Part shown: positions 47,474 to 56,175 of the stretch, piece by piece
How positions within the stretch are numbered: position 1 is the stretch's first letter
How the letters are laid out: every line of letters starts with the position of its first letter
Assembly (NCBI GenBank): GCA_023334545.1
Contig: JAADVB010000050.1
Location: 28,018 to 92,017, forward strand
Direction of reading: 5' to 3'
Length of the DNA stretch: 64,000 nucleotides
Source of the DNA: Salisapilia sapeloensis CBS 127946
Lineage: Eukaryota; Protista; Oomycota
The notes under the pieces: generated by a model
What the model saw: only the letters and a program-made list of their open reading frames with translations
The model's database searches: none
Told to the model about the DNA's origin: nothing
Translations under genes and position numbers: made by a program

Positions 47474-48127
47474 ATGGAGTTTGTGCTCTTCCGCTGCGAG
47501 ACCGTGTGGATTTACCAAGTGCCCAAGGCACAGGTAACATCCTTGATGCCACGTGCAGATGCATGGGACCCAGAGCATCCTTTAATGACTGGATCTCTTA
47601 AAATTCACCAGAAAAACGATAAAGCAGCGATCCAATTGTTCGAGCCGACCAAGAAAGATAGCGAGGGCAATGACTACGAGACACTCTTCGCGCAATGCCC
47701 GCTCGAAATTACACGCGATCTGCCTCTCGACATATATATCCAAGACTGCGTCGACTCATCTCGATACTTTATGCTTCGTGTCGAAGATGAAGCGTCTAAA
47801 CGCCGAGCATACATCGGCGTCGGCTTTCCAGAGCGCGCGACTGCTTTTAATTTCAAAGCAGCGCTACAAGACTACGTCAAGTCTTGCTTGCGTCAGTTAG
47901 AAGTAGAGTCTCGACAGACGGCCGAGGAAGACGATAAACCGATGGAGCCATCGAATAAGTACACTTTGCCGGAAGGAGCAACGATCCGTGTGAACGTGAA
48001 CAAGAGTGGTAGAACGAGTGAACGAAAGGCAAAAAGTAGCGAGAGTACAGACGGGAACTTCTTCCTCCCTCCACCGCCAGCAAATAACACTGATGATGAT
48101 GAATGGGGAGACTTTGCATCCGCTTAA
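47474..48127 (+). CDS. NECAP: NECAP (adaptin ear-binding coat-associated protein)
   Basis: PHear domain (DSSRYFMLRV...YIGVGFPERATAFNFKAALQD) and the terminal WGDFASA motif of WxxF-acidic type. Confidence 0.93.
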   Translation: MEFVLFRCETVWIYQVPKAQVTSLMPRADAWDPEHPLMTGSLKIHQKNDKAAIQLFEPTKKDSEGNDYETLFAQCPLEITRDLPLDIYIQDCVDSSRYFMLRVEDEASKRRAYIGVGFPERATAFNFKAALQDYVKSCLRQLEVESRQTAEEDDKPMEPSNKYTLPEGATIRVNVNKSGRTSERKAKSSESTDGNFFLPPPPANNTDDDEWGDFASA

Positions 48128-48205: not shown

Positions 48206-49248
<1,043 letters not shown>

Positions 49249-49354: not shown

Positions 49355-51824
49355 ATGCTACATGAGCTACTACTTGCTTTGCTAGGTCACACAGGCGATG
49401 TGATTGTGAATAAACAAGGTCGATTTGTCATTAATGATGAAGCAGACTTTCTAAGTCCACCACAGCAAGTGGTACTGAATCGATTGCTTCGACTGGGCGC
49501 GATGTATGCTAAATTGGACGACTTTGTCCAGCACCAAGCACCGCAAGTATCGAGTTTGTACGTACGAGCGCTTGGACAGGGTATACAAAAGTACTTGGAA
49601 CGATATGAGCAAGCGATTGGACAAGTGGAAGTGAAAGTATTATCCAAAGGTGTCGTGTTTCCATTAGCTGAAATGGAAGTGGAGCTCGAAGAGTTTTACG
49701 AAGTCATACCAGAGCTAATAAAAGTTATACACGAAGTCCTCGTGCCATCCAATGGCTCCCATCATGGAGTACTTGATAGTACCAAGTTGCTACTGCTACT
49801 TCATCATCGTAGTCGATCCGGATACCCTCGCGTCCAGACTTGTATGCAGGAGCTACAGAGCTATTGCCATCGGTACATTCTTCATGACTTTTGTGAACTA
49901 GACGTATCTAATTTAATGGAATAGGATACTCTTTCGACAGATCGTCCATTGGATGATCTATAGCGAACTGAACGATCCGTTTTGCGAGTTCTTTGTAAAG
50001 AAACGACCGACGCAAGATCATCACGATGAAAGTGTCTACTTGGATCTAGAAGCCGTTCCGACGTCTTACTTTCCTGCCAACGTCGCGAACAGTATCTTTT
50101 TCATTGGAAAAGCAGTTCAGATCTTGAATCAGTCAGAAAAATTGACATCGGATGAAAGTCAGCAAATTATCGATCGAATGACCCCTTTTACCCAGTCCAA
50201 GCCATTCGATCGATTGGCATTAGAGTATGCGATCGAGACAACGAGAACGTATATCGCTTCTCGAGTGTATGAACAAGTCGTCGTTCAAGCTGAGTTCGTC
50301 CGGTTCTTCCAGACACTCCGTGACTTGTTCTTACTATCCAAAGGCGAGATTTTCCAAGCACTCATCGATCGAACCGAGTCTCGGATGGCTGGCCCACCCA
50401 CACAGAAGATCGTAGAAGAGATTAATCAGTACGTGTGGCCGGATATCCTCCGGGAGTTTCATCTGGACCAAGATCCATTTGCAAACTCCTTTACCATCGA
50501 TGTACCACTCGAGACATTCACGTCCCACGGATTTCAATCGACAAACGGATTTTCTCTGCAAAACGTCGGTCCAAGTGCACGGGATAGAAGTATCCTCAAC
50601 GTTGTAGATCATGGAGATCATGGATCTGTCTGGTGGGAACATCCGCAACGACATCTACAAGCTTTTTCGACGTCCTTCACACTGCATATGACAGGTCGAG
50701 CGAACTATCACTTTGCCTTCCAAGTTTCCAACGACAAATCTTTTGCTCGATCAGCTTTTACAGATACGTCGATGGGGGATGCAGTGTCAAGCGGACGACG
50801 TATCCTAGTGGAGTTCAGCATAGACCGCACGTCCCGACGAATGTACCACGTAAATGCGCACATCCGGACTCTTTCCGCAGAAGCAGATGAGCCCGTGCGT
50901 ACCTCGTCACACACTGTCTCTTGCGGTGCACAAACTGACGTGGCACACGTCTGTCTTCAATATGCGCTTAAAGAATTGCCTCAAGAGACGGATGTGGCAC
51001 CGGTACGCTTTGAGCCTGTGCTCGTGGCGTGGGTGAACGATTCTCAAGTCCTCGAGGAGGTGACGGATGTACACAAGTTATTGGAACGCACAGCTGCAGC
51101 GTCTGAATGCTACATAGGCATATCTTTGTCTCCGTCATTATCATTGTCCCACTGGCAATTTGAAAAATACAAGCATGGGAGTGTACTCCGACCGGACAAT
51201 ACGCTAGATGACAAGTACAGACGTAGTGGACGAGACCTCTGGGCTTCCTTCCGCCTCGATTGTCAAGTCCAGTGGCCATTGCACTTGCTTGTGCGACGTG
51301 AATCTGTTCAGGCGTATGCTTCTCTCTTTGAGTTTCTCTTCCAACTGAAACGTTTAACCCATGCCATGGACCGTACATGGAAGGCCGAGATGCTTCAAGG
51401 AGCTGTGTCACCGGAAAGCCGAGCTGTCTTGGCTCTACGTAGTCGCATGTCATTTGTTTTGCATAGTCTAGAGCAGTATTTGTACGTCTTTGTGATCCAG
51501 TCGAATTGGCACAAGTGTTTCGATCAAGTGACGGCATCATCGGACTTTGACCAGGTCAAACGTGTGCATGAGCAATTCGTCGCCAAAGTCGTTTCGAAAA
51601 GCTACATCCATACGTCTGGCGTCCGTACCTCGCTCCTGGAGCTTATGGACGGTTGTTGGTCTTTTATCTATGCGGTCGAGAATCAGTCGCACGCAGATAT
51701 CCGGGGACTATCCGCTTCTTTTTCAAAGCATGTGGAGCAACTGGAAAGTATGTTATCTACTTCGTCGGATCAGGATCTCCTTCTCTTGCTTGACTTCAAC
51801 GGATACTTTGCACCTCGCGGATAG
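49355..51824 (+). CDS. TUBGCP4: Gamma-tubulin complex component 4 with an internal lectin-like insertion
   Basis: N-terminus MLHELLLALLGHTG is typical of GCP4. GRIP2 motifs LRDLFLLSKGEIFQ and VQWPLHLL...YASLFEFLFQLKR. One intron (~49872-49924). Confidence 0.9.
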
Positions 51825-52170
51825 TCTTCTCGTCCACACTATAAAAAATTTAAATCCAGTTCCATCTGTGCCACCCACCGAGGGACCTAGTCTCGAGCAT
51901 TCTTATCCATCTCCTATTTTATAATCAACGGCGTGTACTCGACGCCATTGTCGCGATCGTTTGAGGGACAAGGCCCCTCAAAAGACAAGCCAGCCGGTAC
52001 GACGAAGCGACGTACTGAATCGGTAAAATACACCAGTGTCCAACTGTCTGCTCGTCTACTAGGCCTGTAGCGAAGTTTCGGGAGTGACCAGTCACGAAGA
52101 AGGACAGTGCGCTCGTAGCACACGAGGAACATTCACAACGATAGGGACGCCCACGACAGGATTTGCGCTT

Positions 52171-55100
52171 ATGGACGATGACGGTCGGTGCCGCAAGTCG
52201 CCGGCGGCCGCGAGCTTATCACGAGCGACACCGAGCGGCGTACGTGGCGACCGAGTGAGTCACGCAGCGGATGACTATTTTGCAGAACGACCGTGGTGGA
52301 AGCGATGGTTATACTGTGGATGCTGCTGGCCGTTCGTCGGACGCGGTGCTGACAATGATAGTTTGTTGGGTGCTAGCGGTGCAAATAGGTCGTCATCGGT
52401 CCCGGGAGCTAGTACGCGGCCCCAATCGGCGGAAACCGTCTTGGCAGAGCAGCAACTAAAAGCACAGATTGCCTATTACTCGACACGAAGAGTGCACATG
52501 AAGCGCGTGCAATTGTGTCTGGAGCAGGAGAAGCGGAACAAATTTTACAAGGAACTCGTGATTTACGTCATCTTCCTCGCGCTGATTCTCACGACCGTAT
52601 TATCCCTCCCAGTCCACTTTCCGTATGAACAGAATGCTGCCTTGTCCGATTTGTTCTTTGACGAAGAGTTTCCGGACATTGAGATTAAAAAGACATTCTC
52701 GGACGTGATGACGGAAGACGAGGTATGGCAATGGGTTGATGGACCGCTCTTTGAAGGTTACTATAGTTTACCTCTACGGAACAATCGGAGGATAGGAAGC
52801 ATTATGCTCCGTACCGGTCGAGTTTCTGGCCAAATGTGCCGAGACATGGACAATCGCAACGACTTTGTTCTATTTGAAGACGAAGTCTGCTTCCCGTCCT
52901 TCGACGTTGACGTCGAGTACAAGAAACCTTATGGGAATGCCCGAGGAGCACTGAAGCAGTCGTATAAGTGGCGTGATGGTATGGAAGTCCTGCGTCGATC
53001 ACAGACGTTCACACCTGGTCTAGTTAGCCACTCGATGAACTATGGTGATGGAGGGTACGCAGTGTATCTTCCTCGAGAAAACGAGACTGCTGCCAAAGCG
53101 ATTGTGAGTCAGTTGAAAGAAGACTTTCTCACGGATAGCACACGCTACCTTGTGGCGACGTTCTCCTTTTACAACCAGCAATCCAATCTCTTTACGTTCG
53201 TCCAAGCCTTGTACGAAATGTCAGACACGGATTACATGGAGACATCGGCACGTGTGAAAAGCTTCCGTATCATGTCCAGCTACACTGATACACAAGCGTT
53301 TTTGCAGGACAATGTGTTTATGATACTATTATCACTCGCTACTCTATGGCTATTGTATCGAGAGCTGTCTGATCTGCGTGACAATGGAATCTCGAGATAC
53401 TTACATTCGCTCTGGAATGTACTGGATGTTGCACAACTCGTTATACTCATCTTCTTCATCCAAGCGTGGGTGCAATACATCATCAAGGCTGAAAAGCTCC
53501 GACATGACTTGTTCCGAGTAGTCGATTTGCAGTGCGACGGTCCTGCTCATGACCAGACCGCTGCGGCTGACTGCTACGTCGATGTCGGATCTCTTGCATG
53601 GTTGTACATGTCCGTGAATGACTTTGCGTCTACTCTCGCGCTCATCTCGATTGTCATTGTTTTCAAGTACTTGCGACTCAACTCTCGTTTGAACTTGCTC
53701 TGGCGGACGCTACGACATGCTTCGAAAGATCTACTAGGCTTTGCATTCATCTTTTTCATCCTCTTCTCCGGATATGCTGTCATGGGACTTTTGATCTTTG
53801 GCAGTTCCACGCGTGGATACCACTCGCTCTCCATGTCATTGATCTCGTGCTTCCAAATGCTCCTAGGTGCCTTTGACTATTCGACGATCCAGAACGCGAA
53901 CCCGACGATGGTCGCAGTCTTCTTCTTTTCCTTTATGATCACAGTCTACCTCGTCTGTGTCAACATGTTCATTGCTATTATGAGCGAGTACTACTCGTTG
54001 TCTCAGAACGAGATGCGGGAGCATGAAGCGCAGAGACGCAATTTTGTCACACAGACGAGTGGTGGAGATGGAGATTTCCGTGACTCGCTCCAGTTCGTGG
54101 ATGTCGAGTACGACATTATTCGACAGCTAACGTCCTATTGGCATCGTATGCGCATTCAAGTACAGCTCCCTCCATCCTCTCCATCGTTTGGGTCACAATT
54201 GACTACGACACCTTTGTACGGATGTCAGCGAGTACTACTTGTGGATTACGATTATTTAATGGCTGAACGTAAGCGACTACGAGCGAAGCTACGTGCGTAC
54301 GTCCATCTAGTCACGACGTGCTTGTCCCTTTTGAGAGTAACGAACTCGGACTTTGAGTTTCGTCTTGAACCAGAGTGCATTGCCGATAAACGACCTCGAG
54401 CATCGTCGAATGATTCGTCTATGGACTATGTCGACTTCCCAGTTACGTATATCCCGATCTCGTCGAAAGCGACGAATGTAGTAGAAGCGCTTAAGTGTCT
54501 ACGCAAGGGCAATCACATTGACATGGATGACGGATCGCTTACCAAGGATCAGATCACGTTGCAAGTGCTTGGAGACCAAGACGCATATGTCCCACCGAAC
54601 TACAAACTACAGGAAGACTTTGAATTTGATGAAGACTGCACATCTGAAGTACGCATCGCAAACTCTGAGGATGGAGAGCGCGTGGGCAACCGACGCTTTG
54701 GTCTGCATCATGTGCATTCTCGCATTGGAGGTGGCGAACACATTCGCAGCTGTCGCGTGCTTTATAATGGTGAGACGGTGGTGGAAGGGAAAGAGATGTG
54801 CAGTCTTCCTCCAACTGCCTGGGTCAAGTACTTGTTCCGACATCTTGTGTGGGGAGGTATCAAGCGTGCTTTTAGCATGAAACGTCGTACGAAGAAGCAG
54901 CGTTTGATCTCAGATGCAGAGGTTGATCGTTTGATCACAGAAAACTTTATCACACCTGGTCGAGGTATGTCCTGTCGGTTTGATGAGCTCGTGCGAAACT
55001 TTCGCATGTTCATCGCGAAGAAGATTCATCGACGTCACATGCGCATTCGCAATCTGGATGAACGCATCTTTATGGAAGTCATTAATTTCCTCGAGCGGTT

Positions 55101-56175
55101 TCCATCTGCCCATTCGCCTCTGGACAAACGAGAGCTCGAAGGGTACAAGTACACGCCTCAGCCTGTGGACACACGTCGTGTCCGGTTACCTAACTCGGTG
55201 AATATGCTGGCGGAGATACTCTCTCAGAATGCACATGAGGTATGGTCTGCCGGTCGGATTGAGCAGGGATGGAGGTGGGGACCTGCTCGAGACAATGATA
55301 CGAAGCTCCATCCGGACTTGGTGCCGTACGAGTCGCTTACGGAAGAAGACAAGCAATACGACCGAGATACGTCTTTGGCGGCACTCAAGGTGATCACAGC
55401 GCTTGGCTACATCCTCGAGCCTCCAGACCACATGGAAGAATTGAAGGTATCATTTGGTACGAAGGCGACTGAGCCTGGTGGAACTTACATGCCTCGGCCG
55501 ATTCCGACTAATAAAGTCCACTTGCCACCGCACTTGAAGTCACTTGTGGAACTGCTTGCAGAGAATACGCATGAAGTGTGGGCCAAGATGCGGATGGAGC
55601 AAGGGTGGGTCTATGGTCCTCGTCGGAATGATGAGAAGCGGGAACACAACGGGTTGGTGCCATATATTTACTTGACACCAGAAGAAAAGCAAATGGACAG
55701 AAATACGGCGATGGAAGCTGTCAAGGTCATTCTTCAGTGTGGCTTTAACTTTGTCCATCGAGACCAGCGAGGAAATAAAAGGATTAAGAAGAAGAGATCA
55801 TCAAAGATGAAAGTGGTCGGACGATCGGAGAATCCGAGCGCGAATCACGTGAAAGATGCAGTTACACTTGCTCGAGGTACTAGTCGCGCGAGAGATGCTT
55901 TCTTACGGAATAACTCTCGAGGAAACAGTGTAAGAAGACGACGTGGTCAATTTGCATCGTCGCCTGCATCGTCCACTTCGACGGTAACCTCGCAGTCAGC
56001 TTTCGGTCTGCAGAGGCAGGCATCGACTGCGACGGCTTCGGTGACGTCCCAGCAATCGACGGAGGTTTCCACACTCCGTACAGAATCCGTACCAGACATT
56101 GTGTCTCCAAGATCCGAATCTAGTAGAGCTGAGGAACAGTCGAGCGACGGAAGGTCGACTGACCAGACAGAATGA
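52171..56175 (+). CDS. Polycystin-2 type cation channel with two C-terminal RyR repeats (oomycete PKDRR type)
   Basis: TM1, then a polycystin extracellular domain, then LWNVLDVAQL...FKYLRLNSRL...LLGAFDY (pore). Two RyR repeats: NAHEVWSAGRIEQGWRWGP...HPDLVPY and NTHEVWAKMRMEQGWVYGP...HNGLVPY. Intronless. Confidence 0.93.
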   Translation: MDDDGRCRKSPAAASLSRATPSGVRGDRVSHAADDYFAERPWWKRWLYCGCCWPFVGRGADNDSLLGASGANRSSSVPGASTRPQSAETVLAEQQLKAQIAYYSTRRVHMKRVQLCLEQEKRNKFYKELVIYVIFLALILTTVLSLPVHFPYEQNAALSDLFFDEEFPDIEIKKTFSDVMTEDEVWQWVDGPLFEGYYSLPLRNNRRIGSIMLRTGRVSGQMCRDMDNRNDFVLFEDEVCFPSFDVDVEYKKPYGNARGALKQSYKWRDGMEVLRRSQTFTPGLVSHSMNYGDGGYAVYLPRENETAAKAIVSQLKEDFLTDSTRYLVATFSFYNQQSNLFTFVQALYEMSDTDYMETSARVKSFRIMSSYTDTQAFLQDNVFMILLSLATLWLLYRELSDLRDNGISRYLHSLWNVLDVAQLVILIFFIQAWVQYIIKAEKLRHDLFRVVDLQCDGPAHDQTAAADCYVDVGSLAWLYMSVNDFASTLALISIVIVFKYLRLNSRLNLLWRTLRHASKDLLGFAFIFFILFSGYAVMGLLIFGSSTRGYHSLSMSLISCFQMLLGAFDYSTIQNANPTMVAVFFFSFMITVYLVCVNMFIAIMSEYYSLSQNEMREHEAQRRNFVTQTSGGDGDFRDSLQFVDVEYDIIRQLTSYWHRMRIQVQLPPSSPSFGSQLTTTPLYGCQRVLLVDYDYLMAERKRLRAKLRAYVHLVTTCLSLLRVTNSDFEFRLEPECIADKRPRASSNDSSMDYVDFPVTYIPISSKATNVVEALKCLRKGNHIDMDDGSLTKDQITLQVLGDQDAYVPPNYKLQEDFEFDEDCTSEVRIANSEDGERVGNRRFGLHHVHSRIGGGEHIRSCRVLYNGETVVEGKEMCSLPPTAWVKYLFRHLVWGGIKRAFSMKRRTKKQRLISDAEVDRLITENFITPGRGMSCRFDELVRNFRMFIAKKIHRRHMRIRNLDERIFMEVINFLERFPSAHSPLDKRELEGYKYTPQPVDTRRVRLPNSVNMLAEILSQNAHEVWSAGRIEQGWRWGPARDNDTKLHPDLVPYESLTEEDKQYDRDTSLAALKVITALGYILEPPDHMEELKVSFGTKATEPGGTYMPRPIPTNKVHLPPHLKSLVELLAENTHEVWAKMRMEQGWVYGPRRNDEKREHNGLVPYIYLTPEEKQMDRNTAMEAVKVILQCGFNFVHRDQRGNKRIKKKRSSKMKVVGRSENPSANHVKDAVTLARGTSRARDAFLRNNSRGNSVRRRRGQFASSPASSTSTVTSQSAFGLQRQASTATASVTSQQSTEVSTLRTESVPDIVSPRSESSRAEEQSSDGRSTDQTE

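What the first reader, a model, noticed from the sequence alone, without database searches (positions are those of the whole stretch)
50511..51167. Legume-lectin (ConA-like) domain inserted into gamma-tubulin complex protein GCP4
Seen: between ...ANSFTIDVP and GRDLWASFRLDCQVQWPLH lie ~220 aa with the L-type lectin strand pattern in the right order: FTSHGF, GSVWWEHP, AFSTSFTL, FAFQVSN, ILVEF, HV, HVCLQY, LVAWVND..VL...DVHKLL, CYIGIS, LSHWQF. Known: in human GCP4 the equivalent position (LTIEY...WAALGLSYKVQWPLH) is only a short variable loop in GRIP2, and GCP4 is a cytosolic gamma-TuRC spoke. The lectin metal- and sugar-binding residues (the Asp of A-D-G and of EFDT) appear lost. Inference: a beta-sandwich grafted onto the microtubule-nucleating ring, probably as a protein-docking module at basal bodies or spindle poles. 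I know of no description of this architecture.
Basis: partly seen in the sequence, partly recalled or inferred. Interest (0 to 1): 0.72.

Follow-up and report, generated by a model that had tools for sequence, protein, structure and literature searches.

The report
Lectin-fold domain inserted in oomycete GCP4
A core subunit of the machine that starts microtubules (GCP4) carries, in this oomycete and in every other oomycete GCP4 I could retrieve, an extra roughly 230-residue domain folded like a legume-type sugar-binding lectin whose sugar and metal site is gone; no paper I could search describes this, and it most likely acts as a protein-contact module.

Summary

- **Gene:** window 49355-51824 (+) is a two-exon GCP4 orthologue with a 52-nt intron. 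Pfam GCP_N and GCP_C match. Human GCP4 is the best solved-structure match by sequence (E 2e-34) and by fold.
- **Insert:** where human GCP4 has a loop of about 27 residues, the window encodes about 230 extra in-frame residues (50505-51191), between two short strands of GRIP2.
- **Fold:** AlphaFold2 folds the insert confidently (pLDDT 84.9, pTM 0.85) as an all-beta sandwich. L-type lectins are the best structural matches in two independent searches: Foldseek E 4e-8, and VIA peanut lectin Z 16.4 over 190 residues, then ERGIC-53, Emp47p and VIP36. Other ConA-like folds trail at Z 11-12. A protein-language-model search also returns only legume-lectin families.
- **Not a lectin family member by sequence:** Pfam Lectin_legB scores 12.9 bits against a cut-off of 26.3. 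The loops that carry the metal and sugar site are 2-4-residue turns.
- **Distribution:** the insert is homologous (22-29% identity) to one in about 25 public oomycete GCP4 proteins (Phytophthora, Peronospora, Pythium, Lagenidium and others), annotated only as GCP4. It is under purifying selection.
- **Open points:** no paper was found. Function is inferred. The scan's notes show no earlier report on other DNA.

The parts
49355..49872 (+). GCP4 exon 1 (start codon at 49355; first part of GRIP1)
   Evidence: The ORF frame of 49070-49924 matches Pfam GCP_N_terminal profile positions 1-172 from the Met at 49355 (E 7e-19). Sequence read.
49873..49924 (+). 52-nt GT..AG intron
   Evidence: GT at 49873 and AG at 49923-49924. 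Splicing restores the frame and gives ...CHR|ILFRQIVHWM..., which aligns to human GCP4 ...VMYKQLSAWM.... Inferred from sequence only, with no RNA data.
49925..50489 (+). Exon 2, rest of GRIP1 and first GRIP2 helices
   Evidence: GCP_N_terminal profile positions 179-292. Aligns to human GCP4 residues 182-394. Helical in the AF2 model.
50490..50501 (+). First strand (FTID) flanking the insert
   Evidence: Strand E189-192 in the AF2 model of exon 2. By position it corresponds to human LTIEY (by eye).
50505..51191 (+). Inserted L-type-lectin-like beta-sandwich domain (exon-2 residues 194-422)
   Evidence: AF2 pLDDT 84.9, pTM 0.85, all-beta, with the same strand pattern in the whole-exon model. Foldseek top hits are all L-type lectins. 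VIA gives peanut lectin Z 16.4, 190 residues, 3.3 A. The Atlas feature search gives legume-lectin families at 0.95. Homologous inserts occur in oomycete GCP4 proteins.
50628..50648 (+). VWWEHPQ, the best-conserved motif of the insert family
   Evidence: Conservation over 28 sequences: W43 and W44 96%, H46 93%, Q48 100%.
51192..51251 (+). Linker back to GRIP2, partly low confidence
   Evidence: pLDDT is below 50 at exon-2 residues 432-436.
51252..51263 (+). Second strand (RLDC) flanking the insert
   Evidence: Strand E443-446 in the AF2 model. The conserved VQWPL motif shared with human GCP4 follows.
51264..51824 (+). Rest of GRIP2 (the gamma-tubulin-binding domain) and the stop codon
   Evidence: Pfam GCP_C_terminal E 1.8e-33. 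Aligns to human GCP4 residues 440-656. The whole-exon model's best fold matches are GCP4 chains of gamma-TuRC structures.

Best explanation
**Shown.**
- Window 49355-51824 (+) encodes the GCP4 orthologue of an oomycete.
- At a point where human GCP4 has a loop of about 27 residues, between two short strands early in GRIP2, a complete beta-sandwich domain of about 230 residues is inserted in frame.
- The domain has the L-type (legume / ERGIC-53 / Emp47p) lectin fold.
- The loops that build the Ca/Mn and sugar site in real lectins are reduced to tight turns, and the ligand residues are not conserved.
- The insertion is old. It is shared, at 22-29% identity, with Peronosporales, Pythiales and Lagenidium GCP4, and in Phytophthora it evolves under purifying selection.

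**Inferred.**
- The domain no longer binds carbohydrate.
- It serves as a rigid protein-contact module on the gamma-tubulin ring complex, at mid-height of the two GCP4 spokes.
- It either docks an oomycete-specific partner (a tether or regulator at centrioles or spindle poles) or buttresses the neighbouring spoke or gamma-tubulin. Lineage-specific insertions of GCP5, GCP6 and fungal Spc98 are reported or proposed to act in these ways.
For: **GCP4 identity.**
- Pfam GCP_N and GCP_C match.
- Best solved-structure sequence hits are GCP4: E 2e-34 with the single sequence and 3e-71 with a profile, against 1e-25 for GCP2.
- The best fold hits of the whole-exon model are GCP4 chains.
- The gene order proteasome-alpha(-)/GCP4(+)/PKD-RyR(+) is the same as in P. 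infestans and a second oomycete contig.

**Lectin fold.** AF2 pLDDT 84.9, pTM 0.85. Foldseek E 4e-8, with the top 50 all L-type lectins. VIA Z 16.4 to 14.4 for six L-type lectin entries, against 11-12 for other ConA-like folds. Atlas features 0.95 with 185 of 256 shared. Weak Lectin_legB hits in 2 of 28 members.

**Loss of the site.** Turns of 4, 2 and 3 residues stand at model positions 63-66, 111-112 and 209-211. Only columns 103 (100% D/E) and 107 (86% E) are conserved acidic between positions 60 and 125.

**Conservation.** Five hits in 1.84 billion representatives, all GCP4. About 25 oomycete orthologues of 824-912 residues carry the insert. pN/pS is 0.14/0.72 in the insert against 0.088/0.64 in GRIP2.

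**Orientation.** The whole-exon model has pTM 0.74, which suggests a defined orientation of the domain on GRIP2.

**Precedents for GCP insertions as contact elements.** GCP5/GCP6 GRIP1 insertions are proposed to dock the NEDD1 pinwheel (10.1101/2024.11.05.622067). The fungal Spc98 GRIP2 insertion bridges to the neighbouring spoke (PMC7658347).
Against:
- Some public gene models splice out part or all of the insert (P0022, P0023, P0026, P0030, P0034). Whether any of these splice forms is real was not tested.
- No partner, localisation or binding data exist.
- My mapping of lectin ligand residues onto the insert is by motif and by eye, not by a residue-level structural alignment.
- The insert evolves faster than the GRIP domains: 49% mean identity against 60-65%. 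That pattern also fits a merely tolerated passenger domain.
Confidence: 0.6

Rival explanations
1. **Passenger domain.** A lectin-type domain was inserted once into a permissive surface loop. It is kept only because losing or unfolding it would damage GCP4. It makes no specific contact.
For: The insert diverges faster than GRIP1 and GRIP2: 49% against 60-65% among oomycetes, and 23% against about 40% for the window. The site is a disordered, variable loop in human GCP4. Most of the large central insertion of human GCP6 can be deleted without effect (10.1101/2020.01.21.914036).
Against: The domain has been retained across deep oomycete divergence, with invariant polar or aromatic residues (W43/W44, H46, Q48, E157, N178, D188, K221). 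In the Phytophthora pair its pN/pS is close to that of GRIP2.
Confidence: 0.2
2. **Still a working lectin.** The domain binds a cytosolic or nuclear glycan or glycoconjugate through a non-canonical site and links microtubule nucleation to it.
For: The fold is that of carbohydrate-binding proteins. One acidic column matching the first metal ligand is 100% D/E, and a second nearby is 86% E.
Against: The loops that form the canonical site are reduced to turns. The positions I matched by eye to the lectin sugar-binding Asp and Asn are not conserved as such. Pfam lectin profiles are not reached. GCP4 is cytosolic or nuclear, where classical L-type lectin ligands are absent (established knowledge).
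Confidence: 0.07
3. **Gene-model artefact.** All or part of the insert is an unusually long in-frame intron, or a mis-assembly, and is absent from the mature protein.
For: No RNA data could be obtained. Several public oomycete gene models omit 22 to 221 residues of it.
Against: The only intron seen in this gene is 52 nt. The chance of 219 open codons is 2e-5, with frame-specific codon bias. There is amino-acid-level homology across about 25 species in one continuous frame with GRIP2. pN is far below pS. The predicted fold is confident.
Confidence: 0.03

Closest known systems
Canonical GCP4 (human TUBGCP4; PDB 3RIP, 6V6S chains I/K, 9QVM)
   Same: It has GRIP1 plus GRIP2 with no long N-terminal extension. 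It gives the best sequence and fold matches, and the VQWPL and GRIP2 motifs are conserved.
   Different: Human GCP4 has a loop of about 27 residues where this protein has a folded beta-sandwich of about 230 residues.
L-type lectins (peanut lectin 1CIW, ERGIC-53 1R1Z/8JP4, Emp47p 2A6Z, VIP36 2DUO, Entamoeba lectin-like domain 5ZBT, M. jannaschii 7EXO)
   Same: It shares the whole-domain beta-sandwich: Z 14.4-16.4, 179-190 aligned residues, 3.1-3.7 A. The strand order and several structural motifs correspond; that part is from my memory of lectin sequences.
   Different: - It does not reach the Pfam lectin thresholds.
- The metal and sugar loops are truncated and the ligand residues are not conserved.
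- It is embedded in a cytosolic protein rather than sitting in the secretory pathway or outside the cell.
Lineage-specific insertions of other GCPs (human GCP5/GCP6 GRIP1 insertions, the GCP6 central insertion, fungal Spc98 GRIP2 insertion)
   Same: These are extra segments in the conserved GCP scaffold that make contacts: proposed docking of the NEDD1 pinwheel, binding of a neighbouring spoke, alignment of GRIP2 domains.
   Different: Those are helices or disordered segments at other positions. By coordinate arithmetic the GCP6 central insertion ends about 90 residues upstream of this site, and the S. cerevisiae Spc98 insertion lies about 150 residues downstream. This one is a globular beta domain recruited from an unrelated family.
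Oomycete GCP4 entries in public databases (for example P. infestans KAF4031-series and T30-4 models, Peronospora belbahrii CAH0475945.1, Pythium insidiosum GLD93806.1)
   Same: They have the same insert at the same site and are clearly homologous. They share the same gene neighbourhood.
   Different: The window's copy is the most divergent: 22-29% identity in the insert and about 40% in the GRIP domains. None of these entries is annotated for the domain.

Membership tests
GCP4 (gamma-tubulin complex component 4) | GRIP1 (GCP_N_terminal) and GRIP2 (GCP_C_terminal) domains above the Pfam thresholds | tested here: met
   GCP_N scores 68.8 bits (exon 1) and 37.4 bits (exon 2). GCP_C scores 116.7 bits against a cut-off of 25.8.
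GCP4 (gamma-tubulin complex component 4) | Closer to GCP4 than to GCP2, 3, 5 or 6 | tested here: met
   PDB phmmer gives GCP4 2e-34 against GCP3 2e-14. The profile gives 3e-71 against 1.5e-25. The top Foldseek chains are GCP4.
GCP4 (gamma-tubulin complex component 4) | Minimal GCP, with no long N-terminal extension before GRIP1 | tested here: met
   The Met at 49355 aligns to GCP_N profile position 1, and the oomycete orthologues start at the same MxHEL motif.
GCP4 (gamma-tubulin complex component 4) | Orthology with annotated oomycete GCP4 by gene neighbourhood | tested here: met
   The order proteasome-alpha(-)/GCP4(+)/PKD-RyR(+) holds in the window, in P. infestans L001 and in L003.
GCP4 (gamma-tubulin complex component 4) | Incorporation into a gamma-tubulin ring complex and binding of gamma-tubulin | not testable with these tools
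   This needs biochemistry or a multimer model.
L-type (legume-like) lectin family, Pfam PF00139/PF03388/PF18483 | Two-sheet jelly-roll fold superposable on solved L-type lectins over the whole domain | tested here: met
   VIA Z 16.4, 190 residues, 3.3 A to 1CIW, with six L-type lectin entries at the top. Foldseek E 4e-8.
L-type (legume-like) lectin family, Pfam PF00139/PF03388/PF18483 | Sequence-profile match above the family's gathering score | tested here: not met
   Lectin_legB scores 12.9 bits against 26.3 (E 0.076), and only 2 of 28 family members give any hit. There is no PDB lectin hit by phmmer or by profile.
L-type (legume-like) lectin family, Pfam PF00139/PF03388/PF18483 | Conserved Ca/Mn ligands and the sugar-binding Asp/Gly/Asn on loops A-D | tested here: not met
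   The loops are 2-4-residue turns in the model. Between model positions 60 and 125 only columns 103 and 107 are conserved acidic. The position I matched to the cis-Asp is Tyr in the window and His in most homologues. The residue mapping is by motif, not by residue-level superposition.
L-type (legume-like) lectin family, Pfam PF00139/PF03388/PF18483 | Carbohydrate binding | not testable with these tools
   This needs a glycan array or ITC on the recombinant domain.

The most novel reading that the evidence does not exclude
[quoted passage not shown] It either recruits the ring to centrioles or spindle poles through a lineage-specific partner, or forms an extra spoke-to-spoke or spoke-to-gamma-tubulin brace that sets ring geometry. 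Either way, nucleation in this group of crop and animal pathogens would depend on a structural element that hosts lack.
Probability: 0.35. Interest if true: 0.72.

Novelty: new variant of a known kind. Interest (0 to 1): 0.58.

Why it matters
GCP4 is regarded as the minimal 'core' GCP, and its structure is the template for the whole family. A conserved globular beta domain from an unrelated family grafted into GRIP2 is an architecture I did not find described for any gamma-TuRC subunit in the papers I could search.

It gives a concrete, testable handle on how the microtubule nucleator is adapted or anchored in oomycetes, whose MTOC biology is barely known at the molecular level. It is also a clear case of a lectin fold re-used in the cytosol without its sugar site.

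Two practical consequences follow. Several public oomycete GCP4 gene models that splice out the insert are probably wrong. And because plants and animals lack the element, it is a possible selective feature of oomycete cell division.

Tried and rejected
**Searches that came back blank.**
- Word-index protein searches with the window's exon 2, both insert only and full length. The window protein has no close relative in that index.
- Pfam, NCBIfam and PDB sequence searches with the insert alone gave nothing significant, and a profile of 28 inserts against PDB sequences gave nothing. The lectin assignment therefore rests on structure and the language model, not on sequence significance.
It was empty for the single protein.
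- An exact look-up of a neighbouring window protein found that the genome is not in the collection, so the species could not be named.

**Searches that were uninformative.**
- The Atlas shape search gave only generic ConA-like folds.
- The Atlas search with P0006 gave only GCP clusters.

**Question left open.** I tried to learn from papers which face of the ring the insertion site points to and to map it onto the fungal Spc97/Spc98 insertions by coordinate arithmetic. Both were inconclusive. The Spc98 and GCP6 insertions appear to lie elsewhere. A short C. albicans Spc97 GRIP2 insertion may lie near the site, but I could not establish this.

Each exon was used by reference.
Full report
**Gene model.** The finding lies in a 623-codon ORF, 49953-51824 (+).
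- Upstream, a second ORF in another frame carries the N-terminal half of Pfam GCP_N_terminal. The long ORF carries the rest of GCP_N and a strong GCP_C_terminal match (E 1.8e-33).
- The sequence shows a start codon at 49355 and a 52-nt GT..AG intron at 49873-49924. Exon 2 begins at 49925.
- The spliced junction reads ...CHR|ILFRQIVHWM..., which aligns to human GCP4 residues 182 onward.
Exon 2 (window:49926-51821, 632 residues) and exon 1 were used separately by reference.

**GCP4 identity.**
- The best solved-structure sequence matches are GCP4: E 2e-34 with the single sequence, and 3e-71 with a family profile. GCP2 and GCP3 reach only 1e-25 to 1e-14.
- The AF2 model of exon 2 matches GCP4 chains of gamma-TuRC structures best.
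- The neighbours are a proteasome alpha subunit on the minus strand and a polycystin channel with RyR domains on the plus strand.
- The same order and orientation flank GCP4 in P. infestans and in a second oomycete contig.
- The window's channel is 59% identical to the P. infestans one.
- I therefore read the window as oomycete DNA and the gene as the GCP4 orthologue. The species could not be named.

**The observation.**
- The HMMER alignment to human GCP4 covers the query up to residue about 168 (human about 394) and resumes near the VQWPL motif (human about 440). So about 233 residues stand where human GCP4 has a loop of about 27.
- In the AF2 model of exon 2 (pLDDT 82.6, pTM 0.74) the insert sits between two short strands, E189-192 (FTID) and E443-446 (RLDC), early in GRIP2.

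The indirect evidence is strong.
- The chance of 219 open codons is 2e-5, and codon bias is frame-specific.
- The only intron seen in this gene is 52 nt.
- The stretch is homologous at the protein level to the same insert in many oomycete GCP4 proteins (below).
- Between P. infestans and a second Phytophthora-like contig the insert lies in one continuous frame with GRIP2. It has pN 0.14 and pS 0.72, against 0.088 and 0.64 for GRIP2. Synonymous sites are near saturation, so I quote proportions rather than an omega value.

**Relatives.**
- An exhaustive phmmer search of 1.84 billion representatives with the insert alone found five proteins at E below 1e-3.
- All five match through a segment that lies before their GCP_C match, and in the three full-length ones it lies between GCP_N and GCP_C. 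They are from Peronosclerospora sorghi, Pythium insidiosum and Peronospora belbahrii, plus unnamed Logan and MetaClust entries.
- A profile search then returned about 30 oomycete GCP4 entries. The full-length ones are 824-912 residues. They come from Phytophthora, Peronospora, Hyaloperonospora, Plasmopara, Globisporangium, Pythium and Lagenidium.
- All intact models carry the insert at the same site.
- Precomputed Pfam annotation shows only the two GCP families, and the source names say only 'GCP4' or 'spindle pole body component'.
- The insert evolves faster than the GRIP domains: mean pairwise identity is 49% against 60-65% among oomycetes. The window's copy is 23% identical to the others in the insert and about 40% in the GRIP domains.
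- Invariant or near-invariant residues include W43, W44, H46, Q48, Y153, A154, E157, N178, D188, G205, L214, W217 and K221, in the numbering of the 246-residue insert.
The insertion is therefore at least as old as the split between the window's lineage and Peronosporales/Pythiales. Its outer limit is unknown.

**Fold.**
- With the 28-sequence alignment, AF2 gives mean pLDDT 84.9 and pTM 0.85, an all-beta domain of about 19 strands. The whole-exon model, built on a different alignment, reproduces the strand pattern.
- Foldseek against the PDB gives at least 338 hits at E below 1e-3. The top 50 are all L-type lectins: Emp47p and Emp46p, many legume lectins, and ERGIC-53. The best is E 4e-8, with TM 0.5-0.57.
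- An independent, exhaustive VIA-align scan of 48,161 chains ranks L-type lectins first:

| Chain | Protein | Z | Aligned / rmsd |
|---|---|---|---|
| 1CIW | peanut lectin | 16.4 | 190 residues, 3.3 A |
| 5ZBT | Entamoeba lectin-like domain | 15.7 | 186 residues, 3.1 A |
| 1R1Z, 8JP4 | ERGIC-53 | 15.0 | 189-190 residues, 3.5-3.7 A |
| 7EXO | M. jannaschii lectin domain | 14.8 | 179 residues, 3.3 A |
| 2A6Z | Emp47p | 14.6 | 189 residues, 3.5 A |
| 2DUO | VIP36 | 14.4 | 185 residues, 3.5 A |

- Bacterial adhesin lectin modules follow at about 13.7. Other ConA-like folds (GH16, GH43 C-terminal domains, sialidase lectin domains) score 11-12.
- The ESM-Atlas feature search on the sequence alone returned only legume-lectin families among its 30 best clusters (0.95, 185 of 256 features shared).
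- The Atlas shape search gave generic ConA-like folds.
- Sequence profiles do not reach significance. Lectin_legB scores 12.9 bits against a cut-off of 26.3 in the window's insert, and gives weak hits in only 2 of 28 members. PDB sequence and profile searches found no lectin.
- Conclusion: the fold is L-type-lectin-like. Homology is plausible but not shown by sequence statistics.

**The binding site.**
- In L-type lectins four loops on one edge of the sandwich carry the Ca/Mn ligands and the sugar-binding Asp, Gly and Asn (established knowledge).
- In the model the turns that I match to three of these loops (A, C and D) have only 4, 2 and 3 residues: positions 63-66, 111-112 and 209-211.
- Between positions 60 and 125 of the family alignment the only conserved acidic columns are 103 (100% D/E, in the VEF motif that I match to the first Mn ligand) and 107 (86% E).
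- The column I match to the cis-Asp is Tyr in the window and His in most homologues. The column I match to the second Asp of 'EFD' is Ser or Ala.
- The residue matching uses lectin sequences recalled from memory, so it is a lead. The absence of enough conserved D/E/N/H columns does not depend on that matching.

**Mechanism (inferred).**
- A sugar-blind, rigid beta-sandwich sits on a surface element of GRIP2 near the GRIP1/GRIP2 junction and has conserved polar and aromatic residues. This is most simply a protein-contact module.
- Precedents exist in the same family. GCP5/GCP6 GRIP1 insertions are proposed to dock the NEDD1 pinwheel, and a GCP5 insertion binds GCP6 (10.1101/2024.11.05.622067). 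The fungal Spc98 GRIP2 insertion bridges to the neighbouring spoke and aligns the gamma-tubulins (PMC7658347).
- A counter-example also exists. Most of the human GCP6 central insertion is dispensable (10.1101/2020.01.21.914036). A passenger-domain reading therefore keeps appreciable weight.
- By coordinate arithmetic the GCP6 and Spc98 insertions are not at this site.
- I could not determine whether the domain faces the lumen, the outside or a neighbouring spoke.

**Novelty.**
- Full-text searches found no description of the domain. I searched GCP4 with lectin, gamma-tubulin complex with oomycete, GCP4/GRIP2/insertion, Phytophthora with GCP, gamma-TuRC evolution, and ConA-like with gamma-tubulin complex. 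A 2026 preprint on gamma-TuRC evolution does not mention it.
- The sequences themselves are public, so this is a new variant of a known kind and not a new kind of system.
- I could not consult InterPro, Gene3D or AlphaFold DB, which may already flag a ConA-like superfamily hit on these entries.

Noticed in passing
window 48349-49204 (-), 49355-51824 (+), 52084-56175 (+); L001 4829-13413; L003 5274-14411: The gene order proteasome-alpha(-)/GCP4(+)/PKD-RyR channel(+) is conserved between the window, P. infestans and a second oomycete contig. The window's channel is 59% identical to the P. infestans one. In the two other contigs STT3 and ribosomal S14 lie directly upstream. In the window a DUF1681 (NECAP-like) gene lies there instead.
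   Followed up: partly
P0022, P0023, P0026, P0030, P0034 (public oomycete GCP4 models): Relative to P. infestans P0016, several deposited gene models lack 22 to 221 residues in or around the insert. These omissions look like mis-predicted introns.
   Followed up: partly
P0033, P0027, P0029 (public oomycete GCP4 models): Three other deposited models appear merged with other genes. P0033 combines GCP4 with PKD-channel domains, and P0027 and P0029 combine it with EF-hand domains.
   Followed up: no
window 49873-49924: The intron is very short (52 nt). Its acceptor AG is part of the in-frame TAG that ends the upstream ORF.
   Followed up: yes
window 47474-48127 (+): This is a single-exon DUF1681/NECAP-like gene (Pfam E 1e-39). 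Its exact protein is absent from the 15-billion-protein collection, which fits a genome that has not yet been deposited as proteins.
   Followed up: partly
window GCP4 compared with its neighbour: GCP4 of this lineage is unusually divergent: about 40% identity to Peronosporales in the GRIP domains, against 59% for the neighbouring channel. In the L003 lineage GCP4 GRIP2 is 71% identical and the channel 67%. GCP4 therefore seems to have evolved faster in the window's lineage.
   Followed up: partly
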